64,000 bases of DNA, taken from Ramazzottius varieornatus. Lineage: Eukaryota; Animalia; Tardigrada. Position 1 is the first letter of the stretch. Every line of letters begins with the position of its first letter. Shown piece by piece: positions 21,801-36,394 of this stretch. The translations under genes were made by a program, and so were the position numbers. The notes beneath the pieces were generated by a model. It saw only the letters and a program-made list of their open reading frames with translations, ran no database searches and was not told where the DNA came from. Location of the stretch: assembly GCA_001949185.1 (NCBI GenBank), contig BDGG01000007.1, forward strand, positions 445,401-509,400, given 5' to 3'.

Positions 21801-23866
21801 ACGCATTGCAGGATCGCGCTGCATTGGCTTTTTTACAGCGTGAATGGCGGGTATGCAAATGGGTCCCCGAAACCGCAGTCCTACATTCACCAATCAAATC
21901 AACTACTTCAATCAAGTCACCACATTCGACCATTCGTCAGTGTAACGCACGCGCAGGTGCTTGGTGCGTAAGGTCTACTGGCATACAGCACACTGCGCAC
22001 AGTTTCACGCTTGTTACGGACGCAAATCAAGCATTACTTTAATCAACTGAAGCCAAATCCGCATTTCAATGATTTTAATTTGGAGCGCCCTGCGGCTTGA
22101 TTTTCATATGATAATTCTAGCTCTGGCTCCCATCTAATTTGATACTAATAAATACTCCACCTCGGCCGAGGCATCTAATAAATGTTAATATGATATATTA
22201 GATGCACAAAGCAGATGCACAAAGCATCTAATAAGTACTAATTTGATATGATACTAATATATGCCAACATCACTATTTTTAACTGTCGGATTAACTCCAG
22301 ATTTTGCGTTTGCCCTGCTTACGAGAAGGCTATACTTGACATTACGTGAAAGATCCTGCAACTACCGGACATTCATGACGATATGTGTGCTCTTCTACCA
22401 TACGTGCTTAGGAAGCCTGATACTCCCTATTGTCAAGAGCCGCGACGAGTACCTGAAACCGATGGAGAAAATGCAAGAAGCTCACGTCAACGATCCCAAT
22501 GTTACTCGCGTACTCCTCAACATTGCAAACTTGTATGCGACTACCATGTTTGTAAGTGATACCTCAACGAAAAGGGTTTGCGAGACCTGCTAACATAGTC
22601 CGGGGCTTCTAGCTCTTCTGTCAAATATTTGAAGACAAACTAATGGTTCAAATGCTGAACAGTTTTGGCACCATTCATAACTCCATATTCTGTCAGAATA
22701 TGTGTCGCGTCGCGCGCCCAAATATTTTTTGCCTAATCACACTCCTACAGATGTACCGTACAACCTGCTTGACAGGTGTTTCAACAGCTGCATCCACTAC
22801 TTGGTGTAGTTAGCCGAGCACAACTTCAAACGTTCTTCAGAGAAGATCTGGTACAGGCTGCGCCGGTTGCAGTAAGAGCCTCTCGTTCAGGAAAACCCGA
22901 CAAACAAATACGAGAGTGTGATGGATCTCCGCAGCTTTATGGAAGTGTTACTAAACCTACGCCGACGTCATGAGATAAGAGGGCCATTTCCTTGGGCCAT
23001 TTTCTTTTCGTACCGGTTTCTTTCCTTCCCCTTCCTACAGGCCCGTCGGCTTTAAGCTACAGGACAACCACTAGACCCAAGTATCAACTAGAACTACTTC
23101 GCGGCATACGGTTCGGGCGTTGTGTTTTGGATGTGGAACTGCGGTGGCATAGTTACTTTGATCTGGAATGCTCCAGCGCGGTAAGACGCAGACCTGGCTG
23201 CTGAGTCTGTCTGGCAAACAGGTTTCCTGAGCTCGATTTTCGCCTGGAGAACTTTCATAACCACCATGTCGCTACCCTAAGATATGCTATAAAACGTGCA
23301 CACTTGAGGCCGAACCCGGTAACTCGAAGCTATGGGTCTTCTGTTGCCCATGTTTGGAGTCGCCGATTTTGCGTTGTAGACCTGGAGCTGTAAATGAGGA
23401 CAGAAAAACACTCAGTATTTCGTTTACTATATCTGCATATACGGGTAGGTATCATCACCGAATCGTAAATACACCCTTTCTGTCGCCTCTCCCTCAGAAG
23501 GGTTGAAAAACACCTACTCCAACCGTAATTGGTGGGACATCATCGTATATCGACGATCCTACCTCATAGTTAATCCCGCACTAGCTAATGGAGAAAATCG
23601 CACTTCAAGCCCTATCCATTCAGGAATTTAGTTATTGGTATAGTCAGGGACAACAGAAATCATTGTGCGTGAGTTGTGATTTGGTGATTAAATGACTGTT
23701 TTTGCAATTAGTAGACGACGGCGCTCCAGAGTCGATAAGAAGGTAGCCGAGAATCAGTGGTTTTCTTGTCGTAGGAGAACAGTATAAAACTGACCCCATT
23801 TTACAAGCGGCGTGGTGGCGTCTGACATTCTGCTTTTCCAGCTCCTGTGTTTGTCTGCAGTTTTCG

Positions 23867-25865
23867 ATGGCGAAAAATATTACTGAGCTATTTTGTGCTA
23901 GTTCCACTTGGAACGTCGGTCAAACACCCACGAATGATCAAAAACACTTGGTTGATTCGTGGAATGATATCAGTTTGGCCAGTCTAATCCACCCTCACTG
24001 GCTGCAGTACTTGCCAGCACCTCCCGCCTTTCGTCTCTCCTTTGGGCTTGTGATATTGGTGATCGGCGTTGTGGCGTTCCTCGGGAATTGCTTGGTAGTC
24101 TACAATTTCCATAAGTAAGCCAACTTGGAACAGTCTGAATACTGACAAGACTGCGGACTCAGTCGGAAGCTTTGCAGGACGCATCGCTACAGCAATAAAG
24201 GCGAACTGGACGACTTGATGGTGAATTTGGCTTTCTGCAATATGCTGATGTCCGCTGTCCTCCCACCGACGTACGCCATCAGCAGCTTTAAAGGACGCTG
24301 GGTCTTCGGATACTACGGTGAGATTATGCGCCACCGGATGCATTTGATCCTGAAATTTTGCCGCAATTATAACTACAGTATACCAAAAATCTCAGTTGGT
24401 GGTGTACACGGTTCTGCTTCTACTGTAGGTTGTCAGCTGCACGGGTTGATCGGATCGATGTGTGGCACAGTATCAATGGTGACGATAACCGGTAAACGTT
24501 TTCCCAGCTTTTTTTATCTCTTAGTCCTAATGTCTAGTTTTTTCCAGCTATGGCTTTGGTACAGTGCTCTGCCATGTGGTAATCCCGTCCCCACTTATCA
24601 CGACCATGCCGGCGTTATCCAGCGTAGCCAATAGCAGTTTTCTTGTTTTAGCAAGCCGTTTGAGCAGTCGCAAGCTTCGGTTACTGCCCGTCACTCGAAA
24701 AGTACCTTACGTTTCATCTGGAGCTACAGGTAAAACTTACATGCTTGTGGCACATATCACAGACAAAGATGTCTACACCGAACGAAACATTGTGTCCGAA
24801 TAACGTCAGCGACACTTTGAATAACCAGGTTTTAGTTGGCAATTTGGCAAAGTTCAATGATAAGTTTTTGGCAGCACGTTCTGGGCGTTTCTCCCTCTTG
24901 TTCCGCCGTTCGCGCCATATGTAAGTAAAGCATTCGAGTACCTTATTTGGGATTCAGCCAAGCTTCCGCTACCGGTAAGCACGTTCTTGATTTCGTAGGC
25001 TCTTTCAGGCTACCTCACCACATGTTCTTGCAACGTTATGGACGACCGGTTTGCGAATCGAGTTTTCATTGGTTCCATGTATGCATGCCTACGACATTGT
25101 GGGTAGGTGCTTACCGCGATCCCAGAACTTGGTCGCACCGTGGTGTTTGCAGGTGTATCGGCGTGTATTTCGTCCCTCTACTCCTGATTATTTACGCTTA
25201 CGGACGAATCATGTGGATAACCCATAAGGAAACGTGCCAGCGCAGAGCTACAGTCGACCAAGGCCTACGGCTGCGACTTGCGACTGGCAGGAGGCGGCAA
25301 ACGCAGGTCGAATCGGCCAGGACCATATTTTATTTCGTGGTTGGGTGGCTGTGGGCCTGGACGCCCTACGCAGTGGTAGCAGTGATGGCAATTTCGGGGG
25401 CTCATTCGTACCTCACGCCAATGGCGTATCATCTGCCATCCATGCTCGCCAAGACGTCTGCTGTATATAACCCTCTGAGTGGGTGCAATGGCCGTTTGTG
25501 AGAACTCCGCACCAGTTCATCTAACATCTGTAATCTTTTATCCCGGTTGATGTGAAAGTAAAGTGTGCTTCCTTTTTCTGTTTTCAGTTTATGCGTTCAG
25601 CAACTCTCGGAACCGCACTGAACTATACCATCTCGTTCGACGATGTTTCGGATATACTGGAGAAAATGAATCGCGACAGGGACCGATTGCGCGTTCAATC
25701 AACGCTCCAGCACAGTCGCTGATTGATCGAATTGCCACGCCTCAGCCGTCCCCTAGAACTCCGCGTATTCAGACAGCCATCCGCATGACTGACTTATACA
25801 TGTATTCCTGCGAAAACCCAAGCTGTGGTTCCCCGCGTAGAGGAGGAATAAGGTTTTCGGTTTGA
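23867..25865 (+). CDS. Opsin (r-opsin-like), 9 exons, with atypical signalling motifs
   Basis: Exons 23867-24114, ~24178-24317 (acceptor uncertain), 24429-24491, 24548-24578, 24652-24729, 24875-24920, 24999-25078, 25153-25478 and 25588-25865 splice in frame. Motifs: IHPHWLQY N-terminus, GN (TM1), NLAF (TM2), WVFG..GC, AWTPYA (TM6), LAKTSAVYNPLIY with the K296-equivalent at 25451-25453. Confidence 0.9.
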
Positions 25866-26169
25866 CAGGTGGTTATCTCCCTAGAACTCCGATACCCAGG
25901 TTTCGGACGTTATTAATAGTCCTTAAGCACCTACTGTCGCAGAACAGGCTGGCTTTCGAGTTGTAGTAACTACTAACTACTGACGGCCTTCCGGTCAAGG
26001 AGTTATAATGAATACCTTGGTTAACAATAATGCGGTCTCTGGGCGTCTAAGGTGCTACTTATCTATTAGCAGGAGCGAACGGCCCTGTATGCTTGTGAAA
26101 ACGTAGGGACTAAATTTTGGCTTTAAATTTTGTTTCTAGAAAATTAGGAAACTGTAAACTCATGGTTTT

Positions 26170-29130
26170 GTTTTGGTTTTTTCTTGTTTTTTTAAATTTG
26201 GTTTACTGGTAATTTGATTAGACGAAAAAAATTTTTCTGTTTCAGTCTCCAAAAACAAACGCAAGCCAATTTGCAAAAGCATAAAGAGGCCCGGTAGAAC
26301 CAGACCCCAAAATATTAAAACAGTACAAATCACCTAAAAATCTCGGTTATTGACATCGACAATAGAATAGATCTCCTCCAAACCTCTATGACTAAAAAAG
26401 ATTCCGAAAACAGAGGCAGCATTACCACGTTGAATATCTATGCTAAGCTTTTGCTTCAAAAACGTGAGAGATCTTGTTTCGCCAGTGGCTTCTTCTATTC
26501 TTTTGCCTATCTGCTGGATAAGGCTGGATGCTGCGTTCCCGAAAGCACCGAAAGTTTCGAACGCTACTGGACAGAACAGGTAGCGACCATCCAGCTCGCG
26601 GTACTTGTGTCTCTTGAGCTCTTCCGCCTTGTTGGCGGCATAACCAAGCTGCCCCGCTGATCCTCGCAGGTATGTTTCTGCAAGAGTGTCAACACAGGTT
26701 ACATCCCAGACAAGAACCTTACCTTGTTGCCACGGGATGAGCGCCAGTCCGTCAGGTCGTTTCTGGTCGTCCCTGAGGATCCCGTTGGGCTCAAGGGCGT
26801 TCGAGACTTTACAGCTGATGAGGCGCCCCAGCTCGTCGACAAGTTTTTTGCAACGACAAACATGGGGCTCACAGAGCCCAGCCCCAAGACGCAAACCAAC
26901 TGAGATGCGGAACGAGTTGTCGTCCAGCAAATTACCTAAAACAGAAATAAGTAACGCATTAAGCCATGCTCCTGAGTCCCTTGCTGGTACGACAACTAAT
27001 CTGGCTTTCTGCTTGGGAACTAGCATCCAGAAGGGTTTGATAGTGCTGGTCAACTATCGGGATGTCCCACGCCTTCCGCGCTGATCGGAGAGGGAGAATG
27101 GGAGGCTGTGAGATACTTTGTTCCTGCCAGAGGTGTATCGCTGGCGATACTATACTATTCACGTCGACTTGAGGATAGATCTGTTTCATCAGATCGAACG
27201 ACGAGTGAACGGAAGCCAAAAAGGCCGGGAGAGCCGGTTCATCGACGCGTCTGATGCCGAGACCGCCCCTACTGACGGGAAGGCTTGACTGCCGCCAGGC
27301 CGTGTCGTCCATTGCGATTTTGGCGATTTTACCTGCACATTTCCGGATGGTCTCATCAAAAGCTTGAAGGGAAGGGAGGCAACTGAAAGTCGGGCTGCAA
27401 CGAAGGATATACAATAGCTTAGGTAGACTAAGACAGTTCTTCAACAGAAACAAAGCTTGGCGGGCCGAGATTTTTTCCAAGCGTGTAATCATGAGCTCAG
27501 CTTGTTGGCTCTTTTTCTCTAAGACCGGAGGGATCGCTTCGGTGAAGACTGGAGCTCCAAGTAGCGTTAGGGTCTCCTTGTCCGGAAATATTACGCCAGG
27601 GCAGAGGAGCTTCATTTTCTGGCGTGTAACTTGCTGTTGGGTAGGAGTACCTCCACAGACAACAAACTCACATTTGGACGTATTGAGCTCGAGGCCCAGA
27701 GAAGCGCCGATCTCCACAATGGTATGCAAGTCCCTACTTACCAGTTCGAAGTCTCCACCAAGCGTGGCATTGTCAAGATACCATACATTGAAGGGCGACT
27801 GAAGCGACTTGGACAGGTTCCGGGTCAGAAGACAGAACAACGATGGCCCTAGGAGGTCTCCGTGTTGAACCCCCCGGGCGGAAGGGATGACGTGCTCGCC
27901 GTAGATGAGATTTGTTGGCGACATGTACATCTGAAAAATAAAAGGATAAATCTCGGGAAGGAACTTCTGGGCCTCCTCGAGTAGCCTGTCTCTGCTAACG
28001 GAATTGAAAGCATTCCTAAAGTCCAGTTTCAGCAAAATTTGGCGGCCTGCCTGGCCTGAGAGGAAACCTCTAGTGGAATGTACTGCTGCTTCGGCGCCGC
28101 CTCTAGTGCCATAGCCGAGCTTTTGGGGTCGTACATGCTTGCTTGTGGCTTCCATCACTCGTTTACTGATGATCTTTCCCGCTGAACGCCACTCAGTGTT
28201 ACCGACCGCAATGGGCCTTATTCCCCCTGTCTTCTTCGACAGAGCGATCAGCGAGGCACCATACAAGGCAGGGCAGACATCTTCTGGTACTTTACCATCC
28301 AGCATCGAGCCGACCAAGTCGGCAAGTGCTTGCGCCAGCTGTAGCGACATAGGTTCCCTCAAACCTACTAGCAAGTCTTTCAGGTGCTGAGGGCGAAGAC
28401 CATCAGGACCCCCAGCTGAGTCACAGGGGAAACTGCTTACAGCTGAAGTTATTTCCTCCGTGGTGACTGGTGGCGAGGGAGGACCAAAGCACTCTTTCGA
28501 GGGGAAATGGGCATCTTAATGTTCGCGGGGATGCTTTTTTTGTAGCTCTCTCAGAGTCTCTGTTGACATAGGGGCTATCACATCTTCGGAGGTGAGGACC
28601 CTAACGGCACCGCTGATATCGCCACCGTTCAACTTCAGCTCCACTCTTCTCTTCATCTGCGAGTCTTCGTCGATCGAGTTCTTCGTCTCCTTTATATTAT
28701 TGGTTTGCGTTTTCGCAGTAGTATCCACCGCTGCAGCTGGCCTAGTGATGTTTTCTTTGACGAGAGAGGTAAAAGACTTCTTCTTAGAGGACGGCTCTGG
28801 AAGTCTGAAAGCAACCGAGGGGAAAGTAAGTAGTTTCTGACAGTGCTCCACATCATTCTTCCTGACACACTCTCTCGCAATATCGAGGAGGGCCGAAGCT
28901 GCAGTTATGCTCGCACCACGTGGTATTCTTTTGATAGTCGGGACAGATCGTTCGACAGGATTGACGGATCGGTTTTCGTCGTAAGCTGCTCAGGACTGGC
29001 TAAGGATGACTGTTTGATCACGTAGCTTTCTCTGGGCTTCTTGGGATGGTCTTTTTCCTCGATGCTTGGTTAGGAAGAGGCAGCTAAGAAGCCACACAAG
29101 TCGTACTTCACTTTCGACTTTCCTTAAGAT
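26170..29130 (-). mobile_element. Decayed non-LTR retrotransposon, CRE-like clade (RT + restriction-like endonuclease)
   Basis: Broken ORFs 28516-28851, 26959-28374 and 26334-27053. Motifs: GGIRPIAVG, LKLDFRNAFN, GVQHGDLLGP, WYLDN (YLDD mutated), LPVSRGGLG, C-x-C, RPDG...WDVT...PVAFET...QRGNA. An A-rich 3' tail lies near 26165-26195 on the minus strand. Confidence 0.92.
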
Positions 29131-34506: not shown

Positions 34507-36394
34507 TCACCGGGTACTTACGCTAAAATATAACGTAAGGACCCGGTGGATATTTCCGTTCCGAGCGCCCGGTACCTGAAATGAGGGTTCAAGCCGCCAC
34601 GGGCATGGTTTGACTTCGGGCAAAGCAGTAAGGCCAGTTTTGAGGATTAGTTTGGCGTACACTGTAGTGTCCGAAAGACGACGTGCGCCTTGTGGTAGAT
34701 TTTCCTTCAATGCGCGTTCCGTTTGTGCCTTTTCTGATGGGCGTTGTCTGGGTGACTGCTGCCCGTCTTCTGCCACGATACATTCGTCCGATGTCCGCAG
34801 AGCCTTAAGGTATGAGGGAGGACTACGTCCACATATCCCAACCGCTACCACACAGACGTCATACGGTGTAGCAGGCTTCAGTCCCCCAATCGTTACTTTG
34901 GTCAGAGTGGCGCAAGGCTCAGGGTGTGAAATCCATTCGTCATCTACCAGCTCTCCATCGTCCAGACTCGAAGCCCGATAGGATACATTGAACTCTTTCC
35001 AGGATTCTCGACTTCTGACTATGGCAGGTTCTTTCCAGCAGACAGTCATAGAAGAAGCGGTTGCGTCGACAACTTGAAAATCTATAACAGGCTGACGAGC
35101 CGTGAACGGCATTTTGTTTCCCTCGATATCGTAGCAAACGATCTGAGCAATGGATCTGTTGGGAATGATACTTTGGGCGACGACACACCTAACATCATTG
35201 TTGGCCGAAGCGAACTCTGTAAGTTCCTTGACCAGGGTCACAAAGGTTTGAACAGTTGTTAAGTTAGCCCAACAGGCCCAATACGAGTCCGGGTTATTAG
35301 TGGATCCGTACGCTTCTCTCCAGTCCTTCACAAAAGACGAAAGTCTCTGTTTTGCTTTATGCACTTGACGGACAATCTCGCTGGTGCATCGTACTATTTG
35401 ACTGTCCCGGCTGTAGAGTTCAGTCAAAGTACCGGTGACAGCCGGACGCGTCTTCGATGTGCCCGAGCATCCCGCACACTGCGCCGTGAATAGCGGAAAA
35501 TCTGCTGACAACTGGATGAACCATCATATCTGTTAGCAATAGAGACTGTTGGTGAAAAGCGTCGATCACGCTGACAACTTCGGCTACGTGCTCGTGCTGG
35601 AATGGTCCGTTAGTGCAATGGAACTTCGTAGACAGTCGGTCCAGGGACCTTAGTCCAATCACGTTTGGGACCAGGTCTGGCGGTACAGCTATGGGTTGGT
35701 AGTGATAATGCGACACTCTTCTACCGCATCAGCAGCGCAGCACTGACTGAACGGCAGCGGAATATTGCTGTGAAACGTCACCGTGACCTCACTGGCGATA
35801 TCTGGTGGACGGCAGGCGCTTTCAGGATACTGGATGATGTCAGCTAGAGCACCGGCAATTTCTCTCAAGAAGCATCTCACCTGAGTCTCATCCTCATCAA
35901 GCTCACGGGTGTAATCAAGCACAATGATGCAATCCACGATGTAGGCAATAGCGGCAACAACATGGGTTTCTATACCGCTTGTTCTAGAATGGTGCTGTTT
36001 GATCAAGTAAGGGATACGGTCGTCTGTCAGCGACACTCTCTGCCGAAGATAGGAACACCTCAAGACAAGGCTGATACTGTGATGTGCGGTTGTTGAGCAC
36101 GAACTCCCCGGATCCGTTGGGCTTTGTGATACCCAGTGCTACATTCAACATATGTACGTCGGATTCCGGTACCCTGATGACCTGCAGCTTTGTCATGAAA
36201 GAGTCGACCTGGAACAGCTTCACCACAGGGATAGGCGAGGGGATGGTGAGCTTGTGAACAGTCGCCGCAGACAAATCATCTACCAACCCATAGCTGTACG
36301 AGGCTGGTACGACTAGCGTCTTTCAAACGTCGTAGAACTCTCCTAGCTGATACTGCTGACCGAACGCTGGGATTCGGCGGTCCGCTTTGTCCAT
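34507..36394 (-). pseudogene. Stonustoxin/verrucotoxin-like (MACPF-related) N-terminal domain + fibronectin type III domain, disrupted
   Basis: MDKADRRIPAFGQQYQLGEFYDV* resembles the recalled stonustoxin ALGRPFTLGMLYD; also THVVAAIAY and an FN3 domain (VVDATASSMTVCW...LKPATPYDVCVVAV). There is a premature TGA at 36323-36325, and the homology is split across several frames. Confidence 0.7.

What the first reader, a model, noticed from the sequence alone, without database searches (positions are those of the whole stretch)
23867..25865. Intact opsin that keeps the retinal lysine but lacks ERY/DRY, both classical counterions and the HPK/NKQ motif
Seen after manual splicing: the TM3 end reads MALVQCSAMCKPF against bovine rhodopsin LAIERYVVVCKPM, so E134/R135/Y136 become V/Q/C. 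ECL2 reads YALSGYLTTC against r-opsin YVPEGNLTAC, so E181 becomes S. Position 113 is His (GCQLHG). The tripeptide after NPxxY is NSR, not HPK/HPR or NKQ. K296 (LAKTSAVYNP), the TM3-ECL2 cysteines and all 9 exons stay in frame. Established: R135 is almost invariant and needed for G-protein activation, and E181 is the r-opsin counterion. Inference: this could be a non-signalling or arrestin-biased opsin, a UV-absorbing pigment with an unprotonated Schiff base, or a retinal-binding/photoisomerase protein evolved from an r-opsin.
Basis: partly seen in the sequence, partly recalled or inferred. Interest (0 to 1): 0.85.

Follow-up and report, generated by a model that had tools for sequence, protein, structure and literature searches.

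The report
Expressed tardigrade opsin without signalling motifs
This is a real, transcribed and correctly spliced light-receptor (opsin) gene of the tardigrade Ramazzottius varieornatus that keeps the lysine that holds retinal but has lost the residues opsins normally need to switch on a G protein and to hold the chromophore's charge, so it probably works in a non-standard way.

Summary
The window is from Ramazzottius varieornatus. The gene is RvY_12034 (GAV01297.1), filed as a "hypothetical protein" with a model that lacks the N-terminus.

- **Gene model:** the full gene has 9 exons and encodes 429 aa. Spliced RNA contigs from three studies confirm introns 1-7 exactly, including the 31-nt exon that encodes VQC in place of DRY.
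- **Residues:** alignments to squid and jumping-spider rhodopsin confirm N at 2.50, H at 113, V-Q-C at 3.49-3.51, S at 181 and NSR in place of HPK. K296, W6.48, Y5.58, NPxxY and the disulfide cysteines are kept.
- **What is shared and what is unique:** the gene belongs to a clade of five R. varieornatus paralogues with identical exon architecture. Loss of HPK and Cys at 3.51 (DRC) are clade-wide. H113 with no acid at 181 is shared with the tandem pair RvY_06702/06704. Only this gene lost D2.50, D3.49 and R3.50.
- **Constraint:** a fragment from another organism (P0002) is its sister, so the lineage is old. Variants in RNA contigs are one non-synonymous and three synonymous codon changes.
- **Most likely function:** a retinal-binding opsin that no longer activates G proteins in the canonical way. 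This is untested.

The scan also noted the H113/A181 tandem pair (s1-789816), which I checked, and other motif-poor opsins in this genome, which I did not check. It is a new variant of a known kind.

The parts
23867..24114 (+). Exon 1: start codon, N-terminus with an NIT glycosylation site, the r-opsin HPHW motif and TM1. Missing from the GenBank model RvY_12034.
   Evidence: It starts at the first in-frame start codon after a stop. The 24114>24178 joint is seen in an X1 RNA contig, and the X4 loose end matches the end of exon 1. The script model agrees.
24178..24317 (+). Exon 2: ICL1 and TM2, with Asn104 (codon 24239-24241) where class A GPCRs have Asp2.50.
   Evidence: Joints in X1 and X4; Pfam 7tm_1, weak; alignments.
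24429..24491 (+). Exon 3: TM3 start, with Cys131 (bovine C110) and His134 (codon 24440-24442, bovine position 113).
   Evidence: Joints in X1 and X4; alignments.
24548..24578 (+). Exon 4, a 31-nt micro-exon: TM3 end, with Val155-Gln156-Cys157 (24559-24567) in place of D/E-R-Y.
   Evidence: Both flanking joints appear in an X4 contig with no differing letter; the 24577>24651 joint also appears in X1. The four paralogues have a 31-nt exon here that encodes DRC.
24652..24729 (+). Exon 5: ICL2 and TM4 start.
   Evidence: Joints in X1 and X4; script model.
24875..24920 (+). Exon 6: TM4 end.
   Evidence: Joints in X1 and X4; script model.
24999..25078 (+). Exon 7: ECL2 hairpin, with Ser205 (25005-25007, bovine position 181) and Cys211 (bovine C187).
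   Evidence: Joints in X1, X4 and X2; alignments.
25153..25478 (+). Exon 8: TM5, ICL3, TM6 and TM7, with Tyr5.58, the AWTPY motif (W6.48), Lys329 (25451-25453, bovine K296) and the start of NPLIY.
   Evidence: Pfam 7tm_1, E = 5e-11; PDB matches to spider and squid rhodopsin; 100% identical to P0001; joint 25078>25153 in X2.
25588..25865 (+). Exon 9: end of TM7, helix 8 with Asn-Ser-Arg (25602-25610) in place of His-Pro-Lys, a disordered C-terminal tail and the TGA stop.
   Evidence: An X1 contig starts exactly at 25588 and runs to 25953. P0001 uses the same junction. The AF2 model shows helix 8 followed by a low-confidence tail.

Best explanation
RvY_12034 is an expressed, intact, fast-evolving rhabdomeric-type opsin paralogue of the eyespot-less tardigrade Ramazzottius varieornatus. 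It most likely still folds as a seven-helix opsin and binds retinal through Lys329 (bovine K296). It has lost three residues of the G-protein activation machinery (Asp2.50 to Asn, Asp3.49 to Val, Arg3.50 to Gln), on top of the clade-wide loss of the HPK tripeptide. It therefore most likely no longer activates Gq, or any G protein, in the canonical way. Instead it probably acts as a G-protein-independent retinal protein: a light- or retinal-dependent partner, scaffold or arrestin-binding receptor, or a retinal-handling protein. It has no carboxylate at position 113 or 181, and neither do its two closest paralogues. Its Schiff base is therefore either unprotonated (UV-absorbing) or stabilised in another way, for example by an anion or water held by His134. 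Shown here: the gene structure, transcription and splicing, residue identities, family placement, and the age and conservation of the lineage. Inferred: retinal binding, loss of G-protein coupling and the spectral consequence.
For: - **Transcription and splicing:** introns 1-7 are confirmed by spliced contigs from three studies. There is no second genomic copy that could be a retrocopy.
- **Intact gene:** the ORF has 429 codons. The same 9-exon architecture occurs in four paralogues, with identical 63/31/46/80-nt exons 3, 4, 6 and 7.
- **Opsin family:** best solved relatives are squid and jumping-spider rhodopsins (E about 1e-33), with K296, NPxxY, W6.48, Y5.58 and both disulfide cysteines aligned.
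- **Fold:** the AF2 model of P0001 has pLDDT 79.8 and pTM 0.74, with TM2-TM7, the ECL2 hairpin and helix 8.
- **Private losses:** all four paralogues keep D2.50 and D-R at 3.49-3.50; only this gene has N and V-Q. R3.50 is present in 67 of 69 other opsins.
- **Pattern of change:** at sites invariant in the other four paralogues, its changes in the retinal/extracellular half are conservative hydrophobic swaps (13 of 64). Those in the cytoplasmic half (11 of 39) include D104N, D155V, R156Q, L259R and Y346N.
- **Age and constraint:** the fragment P0002 (56% identical over exon 8, from another organism) is its sister with support 99/96 and keeps the Lys and TM5-7.
- **Variants in RNA contigs:** one non-synonymous change (C10R) against three synonymous codon changes, one of them a double CGA>AGG Arg change.
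- **Established knowledge:** Arg3.50 of the E/DRY motif contacts the G-alpha C-terminus and is needed for transducin activation in rhodopsin. Glu181 is the usual counterion of non-vertebrate opsins (PMC6513861).
Against: - No functional assay exists. Retinal binding, absorbance and coupling are all inferred from sequence.
- NPxxY, Y5.58 and W6.48, which also belong to the activation pathway, are kept. This could mean that some conformational signalling is still selected.
- The gene has the longest terminal branch of its clade (0.69-0.93 against 0.16-0.58). It departs from clade-invariant sites two to three times more often than any paralogue, in both halves of the protein. That also fits relaxed constraint.
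- The variant sample is tiny (4 codons).
- Mutating conserved acidic residues, including E181, had only modest effects on Drosophila Rh1 absorbance (PMC4571949). Absence of Glu181 therefore does not by itself predict a UV pigment.
- The state of 3.49-3.50 in the sister fragment P0002 is unknown, so the age of the VQC change is unknown.
Confidence: 0.5

Rival explanations
1. It is still a working G-protein-coupled photoreceptor. It would use a non-canonical activation interface and counterion, for example chloride or water held by His134, or a different G protein. It would then be an ordinary non-visual opsin with unusual residues.
For: K296, W6.48, Y5.58, NPxxY, helix 8 and the disulfide cysteines are all kept. 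The lineage is old and transcribed. Opsins without E113 or E181 can be visible-light, G-protein-active pigments that use chloride as counterion (coral ASO-II opsins, PMC12401545). Paralogues RvY_06702/06704 combine H113 and no E181 with an intact D-R, which suggests the counterion change alone is compatible with signalling.
Against: R3.50 is near-invariant (67 of 69) and, by established knowledge, is needed for G-protein activation. Here it is lost together with D3.49, D2.50 and HPK. The ASO-II solution uses Glu292, but this protein has Ser at that position (SMLAK; read from the sequence).
Confidence: 0.22
2. It is a decaying gene. After eyespot loss in R. varieornatus, or after duplication, constraint relaxed and activation motifs eroded. 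The open reading frame simply has not yet been hit by a stop.
For: It has the longest terminal branch of the five paralogues and the most departures from clade-invariant sites, in both halves of the protein. Several motifs are lost at once. R. varieornatus lacks eyespots (PMC8350360). Contig depth is low. Other unchecked scan notes report further motif-poor opsins in this genome.
Against: 429 codons across 9 exons stay open, with 8 canonical introns that are spliced correctly. The sister fragment P0002 in another organism keeps an open exon 8 with the Lys and strongly conserved TM5-7. Variants are one non-synonymous to three synonymous codon changes. Changes in the retinal-pocket half are conservative. 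The other opsins of this genome that I checked keep E/DRY, so there is no general decay.
Confidence: 0.15
3. It is a retinal photoisomerase or retinal store that supplies 11-cis retinal to the other opsins, by analogy with RGR and retinochrome.
For: It keeps the Lys and the pocket but lacks G-protein motifs. RGR and retinochrome also have degraded signalling motifs and are widely held not to signal (PMC9368030). No RGR, retinochrome or peropsin-type opsin is reported in tardigrades (PMC8350360).
Against: It is an r-opsin, not a relative of RGR or retinochrome. Its NPxxY is intact, whereas the hallmark of those groups is a derived NPxxY (PMC9368030). Even for RGR and retinochrome the photoisomerase role is disputed (PMC9368030). 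By general knowledge, r-opsins are bistable and need little external re-isomerisation.
Confidence: 0.1

Closest known systems
Paralogues RvY_06702 and RvY_06704 (tandem pair on another contig of the same genome)
   Same: They are sister to this gene in the tree (98* SH-aLRT; 98/94). They share the 9-exon architecture, His at 113, no acidic residue at 181 (Ala), Cys at 3.51, Lys296, NPxxY and no HPK (NPR).
   Different: They keep Asp2.50 and Asp-Arg at 3.49-3.50. This gene has Asn and Val-Gln, and a terminal branch three to four times longer.
Tardigrade r-opsin expansions: 'Ramazzottius arthropsin 1-3' (Fleming et al. 2021, PMC8350360) and He-r-opsin-nv of Hypsibius exemplaris (Dutta et al. 2026, bioRxiv 10.64898/2026.04.15.718617)
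   Same: These are lineage-specific, non-visual r-opsin duplicates in eutardigrades that keep K296 and NPxxY and have a derived tripeptide in place of HPK (HQR in Hypsibius; NPR, NSR or SAR here).
   Different: Neither paper reports loss of E/DRY or of the E181 counterion. The Hypsibius nv opsin that I aligned keeps ERY, Y113 and E181. I could not map the papers' gene ids to RvY_12034, and no paper in the library names this gene.
Canonical Gq-coupled r-opsins with solved structures (squid rhodopsin 2z73; jumping-spider rhodopsin-1 6i9k)
   Same: They are the best sequence matches among solved structures (E about 1e-33). The alignment is collinear from TM2 to helix 8, and the Lys, the disulfide cysteines, W6.48, Y5.58 and NPxxY are conserved.
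   Different: They have D2.50, Y at 113, DRY, E181 and HPK. All five of these sites differ in this gene.
Coral ASO-II opsins with a chloride counterion (PMC12401545)
   Same: They are opsins with a retinal Lys but no Glu at 113 or 181.
   Different: They belong to an unrelated cnidarian clade, have a conserved Glu292 that helps chloride binding (this gene has Ser there), and activate G proteins.
RGR opsins and retinochromes (PMC9368030)
   Same: They are retinal-binding opsins with degraded G-protein motifs that are thought not to signal.
   Different: They belong to a different opsin group. Their derived motif is NPxxY (for example NAxxY), which is intact in this gene.

Membership tests
Opsin (retinal-binding class A GPCR) | Seven-helix rhodopsin-family fold | tested here: met
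   Pfam 7tm_1 on exon 8 (5e-11) and weakly on exon 2. The AF2 model of P0001 has pLDDT 79.8 and pTM 0.74, with TM2-TM7 and helix 8. TM1 lies in exon 1, which was read directly but not folded.
Opsin (retinal-binding class A GPCR) | Schiff-base lysine in TM7 (bovine K296) | tested here: met
   Lys329 aligns to the retinal Lys of squid and spider rhodopsin. The column is invariant in 77 of 77 other opsins.
Opsin (retinal-binding class A GPCR) | Carboxylate counterion at position 113 or 181 | tested here: not met
   His134 at 113 and Ser205 at 181. 73 of 73 aligned other opsins have E or D at 181.
Opsin (retinal-binding class A GPCR) | Actual binding of retinal and light sensitivity | not testable with these tools
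   This needs expression and spectroscopy.
Canonical Gq-coupled rhabdomeric opsin | Phylogenetic position among r-opsins | tested here: met
   The best solved relatives are squid and spider r-opsins. The five-gene clade falls inside the r-opsin part of the 82-row tree.
Canonical Gq-coupled rhabdomeric opsin | E/DRY motif with Arg3.50 | tested here: not met
   Val155-Gln156-Cys157, confirmed in RNA contigs.
Canonical Gq-coupled rhabdomeric opsin | HPK/HPR tripeptide in helix 8 | tested here: not met
   Asn-Ser-Arg. The first position of this tripeptide is His in 65 of 77 other opsins.
Canonical Gq-coupled rhabdomeric opsin | NPxxY in TM7 | tested here: met
   NPLIY.
Arthropsin (non-visual r-opsin group; the label used for Ramazzottius genes in PMC8350360) | Forms a clade with arthropod arthropsins | tested here: inconclusive
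   The quick PMSF tree puts the five-gene clade with tardigrade visual r-opsins (96* SH-aLRT). The careful LG+G4 tree leaves it unresolved. Forcing it together with the Daphnia/collembolan clade is not rejected (AU p = 0.53). That clade is only presumed to be arthropsin, because no source names it so. The Daphnia sequence aligned (P0089) and the five-gene clade both have Cys at 3.51.
RGR / retinochrome photoisomerase opsins | Membership of that opsin group, and a derived NPxxY | tested here: not met
   The nearest relatives are r-opsins and NPxxY is intact. The criterion is taken from PMC9368030.
Pseudogene | Stops, frameshifts, broken splice sites or no transcription | tested here: not met
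   The 429-codon ORF is open with 8 GT..AG introns. Spliced transcripts occur in three studies.

The most novel reading that the evidence does not exclude
A sub-clade of tardigrade r-opsins (RvY_06702, RvY_06704 and RvY_12034) has given up the otherwise universal Glu181 counterion for a His113-based arrangement, either an anion or water bridge or an unprotonated UV-absorbing Schiff base. One member, RvY_12034, has gone further and become a G-protein-independent retinal protein, as an arrestin-biased receptor, a scaffold or a photoisomerase. This arose independently of RGR and retinochrome and has been kept by selection since before the split from the organism that carries fragment P0002.
Probability: 0.25. 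Interest if true: 0.8.

Novelty: new variant of a known kind. Interest (0 to 1): 0.6.

Why it matters
**Separating retinal binding from signalling.** Opsins are the model for how a class A GPCR couples a ligand switch to a G protein. Natural opsins that keep the chromophore lysine but drop Arg3.50 and the counterion are rare: in the 77 relatives compared here, none lacked an acid at 181 and only 2 of 69 lacked Arg3.50. This gene is expressed, correctly spliced and old. It would therefore be a natural experiment on what a retinal-binding seven-helix protein can do without canonical coupling.

**Built-in controls.** Its two sister genes (H113, no E181, DRC kept) and two further paralogues (Y113, E181, DRC) form a graded series within one genome. 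This series can separate the effect of counterion loss from the effect of DRY loss.

**Link to an open question.** It bears on what the large non-visual opsin expansions of tardigrades are for, here in a species without eyespots.

**Annotation fix.** The GenBank model RvY_12034 lacks exon 1 and part of exon 2 (96 residues), and three paralogue models (RvY_06704, RvY_06206, RvY_14828) are mis-spliced.

Tried and rejected
- **The look-up of encoding contigs on P0002:** I wanted the DNA of the sister fragment, to see its exon 4.
- **The search for related loci, JGI metagenome contigs, with an exon-8 alignment:** 75 pattern matches, none confirmed as a relative.
- **The search for homologous proteins with exon 2 (46 aa):** aimed at finding the D2.50 state in orthologue fragments. 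No candidate shared enough words.
- **The search for homologous proteins with P0001 and P0003:** only distant arthropod opsins (34% identity or less) and one paralogue. No full-length orthologue is in that collection.
- **dN/dS between paralogues:** synonymous sites are saturated (pS 0.70-0.85), so this says nothing about this branch.
- **AU test on the 82-row tree:** it did not finish in three runs. I replaced it with a 30-row test.
- **Artefact of manual splicing:** rejected by the RNA joints and by the independent script model.
- **Alternative exons restoring DRY or E181:** none in the introns.
- **Retrocopy as the source of the spliced contigs:** only one genomic locus matches exon 8 at 100%.
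- **General opsin decay in this genome:** the visual r-opsin locus and five c-opsin-like loci that I checked keep E/DRY or DRW.
- **Supplementary tables of PMC8350360:** not held, so the paper's g-numbers could not be mapped to RvY ids.
- **Joined 429-aa model:** Exons were searched by reference. The database protein P0001, identical to residues 97-429, was used for the PDB search and for AF2. Joined models of the five paralogues were built and used only inside local scripts for alignment and trees.
Full report
**Source and identity.** Exon 8 of the candidate (window 25154-25477) is 100% identical to one protein among 1.84 billion representatives, P0001. P0001 is GAV01297.1, "hypothetical protein RvY_12034" of the tardigrade Ramazzottius varieornatus. 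The window is contig C7:445401-509400 of that assembly. P0001 has 333 aa and begins inside TM2, so the public model lacks the N-terminus and TM1.

**Gene model.** Reading the sequence and locating splice contexts gives nine exons: 23867-24114, 24178-24317, 24429-24491, 24548-24578, 24652-24729, 24875-24920, 24999-25078, 25153-25478 and 25588-25865. Together they make 1290 nt, that is 429 codons plus TGA.
- A script independently returned the same nine exons. It anchors on conserved peptides and picks GT..AG pairs by similarity to the paralogue P0003.
- The same script reproduced P0003 exactly for its own locus. The last 333 residues of the window model equal P0001.
- ATG 23867 is the first in-frame start codon after a stop.

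**Transcript evidence.** Contigs of four public runs from three studies were laid on 23700-26000.
- They carry joints at 24114>24178, 24317>24429, 24491>24548, 24578>24652, 24729>24875, 24920>24999 and 25078>25153. All are GT..AG and match introns 1-7 of the model. No other joints appear and depth inside the introns is zero.
- The 31-nt exon 4, which carries VQC, lies in an X4 contig with no differing letter. Its downstream junction is also seen in X1.
- Intron 8 is not bridged. An X1 contig begins exactly at 25588, and the GenBank model uses the same junction.
- Only one genomic locus matches exon 8 at 100%, so the spliced contigs come from RNA and not from a retrocopy.
- No reading frame in the introns could supply an alternative exon with E/DRY or a Glu at 181.

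**Residue assignments.** HMMER alignments of P0001 to squid rhodopsin and jumping-spider rhodopsin-1 (E about 1e-33, collinear from TM2 to helix 8) and a MAFFT alignment with twelve named opsins agree. In the numbering of the 429-aa model:

| Site (bovine or GPCR numbering) | This gene |
|---|---|
| 2.50 (D83) | Asn104 |
| C110 | Cys131 |
| 113 | His134 |
| 3.49-3.51 (E/DRY) | Val155-Gln156-Cys157 |
| 181 | Ser205 |
| C187 | Cys211 |
| K296 | Lys329 |
| NPxxY | NPLIY, 335-339 |
| HPK tripeptide | Asn-Ser-Arg, 343-345 |

Tyr5.58 and the AWTPY motif (W6.48) are kept. Among 77 other opsin representatives, position 181 is Glu (69) or Asp (4) and never anything else. Position 3.50 is Arg in 67 of 69, and the Lys is invariant.

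**Fold.** AlphaFold2 on P0001 with a 39-sequence alignment gives pLDDT 79.8 and pTM 0.74. The model shows helices for TM2-TM7, an ECL2 hairpin, helix 8 and a disordered tail.

**Paralogues.** A six-frame search of the genome found four close relatives. RvY_06702 and RvY_06704 sit in tandem on C3, RvY_06206 is on C2 and RvY_14828 is on C11. After re-modelling, all five genes have nine exons, and exons 3, 4, 6 and 7 are 63, 31, 46 and 80 nt in every one. The GenBank models of three of them read through introns.

| Gene | 2.50 | 113 | 3.49-3.51 | 181 | Helix-8 tripeptide |
|---|---|---|---|---|---|
| RvY_06702 | D | H | DRC | A | NPR |
| RvY_06704 | D | H | DRC | A | NPR |
| RvY_06206 | D | Y | DRC | E | NSR |
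| RvY_14828 | D | Y | DRC | E | SAR |
| RvY_12034 | N | H | VQC | S | NSR |

All five keep K296 and NPxxY. Three layers of change follow from this table.
- Loss of HPK and Cys at 3.51 are ancestral to the whole clade.
- His113 goes with loss of the acid at 181 in three genes, and Tyr113 goes with Glu181 in the other two.
- Loss of D2.50, D3.49 and R3.50 is private to RvY_12034.

**Phylogeny.**
- In an 82-row tree (quick search, LG+C20 PMSF) the five genes form a clade (100*) on a long stem. RvY_12034 is sister to RvY_06702 plus RvY_06704 (98*). The clade joins the tardigrade visual r-opsins and a Hypsibius non-visual (HQR) opsin (96*), inside panarthropod r-opsins.
- A careful 30-row LG+G4 tree confirms the inner relationships (100/99* and 98/94*) but leaves the deeper position unresolved.
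- Forcing the clade together with a Daphnia/collembolan clade that I presume to be arthropsins is not rejected (AU p = 0.53).
- Fleming et al. 2021 list "Ramazzottius arthropsin 1-3" with no Hypsibius counterpart (PMC8350360). That fits this clade, because no Hypsibius protein came closer than 36-43% over exon 8. I could not map their gene numbers, because the supplements are not held.
- No paper in the library names RvY_12034. Dutta et al. 2026 describe derived HQR tripeptides in Hypsibius non-visual r-opsins but do not discuss DRY or the counterion.

**Age and constraint.**
- On exon 8, an unnamed 115-aa fragment from an ENA assembly (P0002, 56% identity) is sister to RvY_12034 with support 99/96. 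Another fragment, P0013, joins RvY_06206 and RvY_14828. The RvY_12034 lineage therefore predates the split from another organism. It has kept an open exon 8 with the Lys and well-conserved TM5-7. In P0002 the NPxxY Asn is replaced by Thr.
- Synonymous sites between paralogues are saturated.
- Contigs of runs X2 and X3 differ from the assembly at four codons: C10R, and synonymous changes at S39, I287 and R385 (CGA>AGG). This leans towards purifying selection, but the sample is very small.
- RvY_12034 has the longest terminal branch of its clade.
- It departs from sites invariant in the other four paralogues at 13 of 64 positions in the retinal/extracellular half. All of these are conservative hydrophobic swaps.
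- It departs at 11 of 39 positions in the cytoplasmic half. These include D104N, D155V, R156Q, L259R and Y346N.

**Other opsins of the genome.** The visual-type r-opsin on C4 has D2.50, Y113, DRY, E181 and HPR. Three c-opsin-like loci have DRY or DRW and E181, and two more have ERY. There is thus no general loss of E/DRY among the loci I checked. Earlier notes of this scan flag the tandem pair with E181A/H113 (s1-789816). I verified that one. They also flag several other motif-poor opsins in this genome, which I did not check.

**Interpretation.**
- The gene is real, intact, expressed and old, so a splicing artefact and outright pseudogenisation are unlikely.
- By established knowledge, Arg3.50 is the contact for the G-alpha C-terminus and is needed for G-protein activation. 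Its loss together with D3.49, D2.50 and HPK, while the retinal lysine and the pocket are kept, points to an opsin that binds retinal but does not couple in the canonical way (confidence about 0.5).
- What it does instead is open: arrestin-type or scaffold signalling, retinal handling, or a light-independent role.
- The absence of any carboxylate at 113 or 181 predicts either a UV-absorbing unprotonated Schiff base or a non-carboxylate counterion. There is a precedent in coral ASO-II opsins, which use chloride but with Glu292 (PMC12401545). This gene has Ser at that position.
- Drosophila Rh1 mutagenesis warns that r-opsin absorbance can be robust to loss of conserved acids (PMC4571949).
- Rivals are a still-coupled non-canonical photoreceptor (0.22), relaxed constraint in an eyespot-less species (0.15) and an RGR-like photoisomerase (0.10).

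**Limits.**
- The metagenome scan and the exon-2 search found nothing.
- The joined 429-aa model was not sent to any search or fold tool. Exons were searched by reference, and the database protein P0001 stood in for residues 97-429. Joined models were used only in local scripts.

Noticed in passing
G000:C3:786500-796499 (L013): RvY_06702 and RvY_06704: A tandem pair of r-opsin paralogues with His at 113 and Ala at 181 but intact D2.50 and D-R-C. The GenBank model of RvY_06704 (P0219, 251 aa) reads through introns; a clean 9-exon, 412-aa model exists. Together with RvY_12034 they form a sub-clade with no carboxylate at either classical counterion site.
   Followed up: partly
L014 (G000:C2:8421500-8427500) and L015 (G000:C11:269500-277000): RvY_06206 and RvY_14828 are annotated as 330-aa and 178-aa fragments with intron read-through. 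Both have complete 9-exon models (435 and 426 aa) with Y113, DRC, E181 and K296.
   Followed up: partly
window 26334-28374, minus strand: Two overlapping ORFs (239 aa and 471 aa) lie about 470 bp downstream of the opsin's stop codon. The longer one has a reverse-transcriptase domain (RVT_1, 1e-19), so this is probably a retrotransposon remnant.
   Followed up: partly
window 34510-35511, minus strand: A 334-aa ORF with a fibronectin type III domain (7e-10). It is unrelated to the opsin.
   Followed up: no
L020 (G000:C1:1859500-1866500) and L021 (G000:C11:397000-404500): Two further opsin-like loci keep ERY, the Lys and NPxxY. In ungapped matches they appear to have Lys, not Asp, at the TM2 2.50 position (LNLTVSKF and LNLSACKL). 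This was not checked with a proper alignment.
   Followed up: no
P0028 (Triops granarius opsin BAG80980) and P0044: These branchiopod-type opsins also have His at position 113, but together with Asp at 181. His113 is therefore not unique to the tardigrade clade.
   Followed up: no
P0002 (ENA fragment, sister of RvY_12034): In the presumed orthologue the NPxxY Asn is Thr (VYTP). This is another activation-motif change in the same lineage. The source organism is unknown.
   Followed up: partly
window 23614-23866 (5' of the start codon): An X1 RNA contig runs continuously from 23880 back past 23700 and 86 nt further. This implies a 5' UTR of at least about 250 nt, or an upstream transcript.
   Followed up: no
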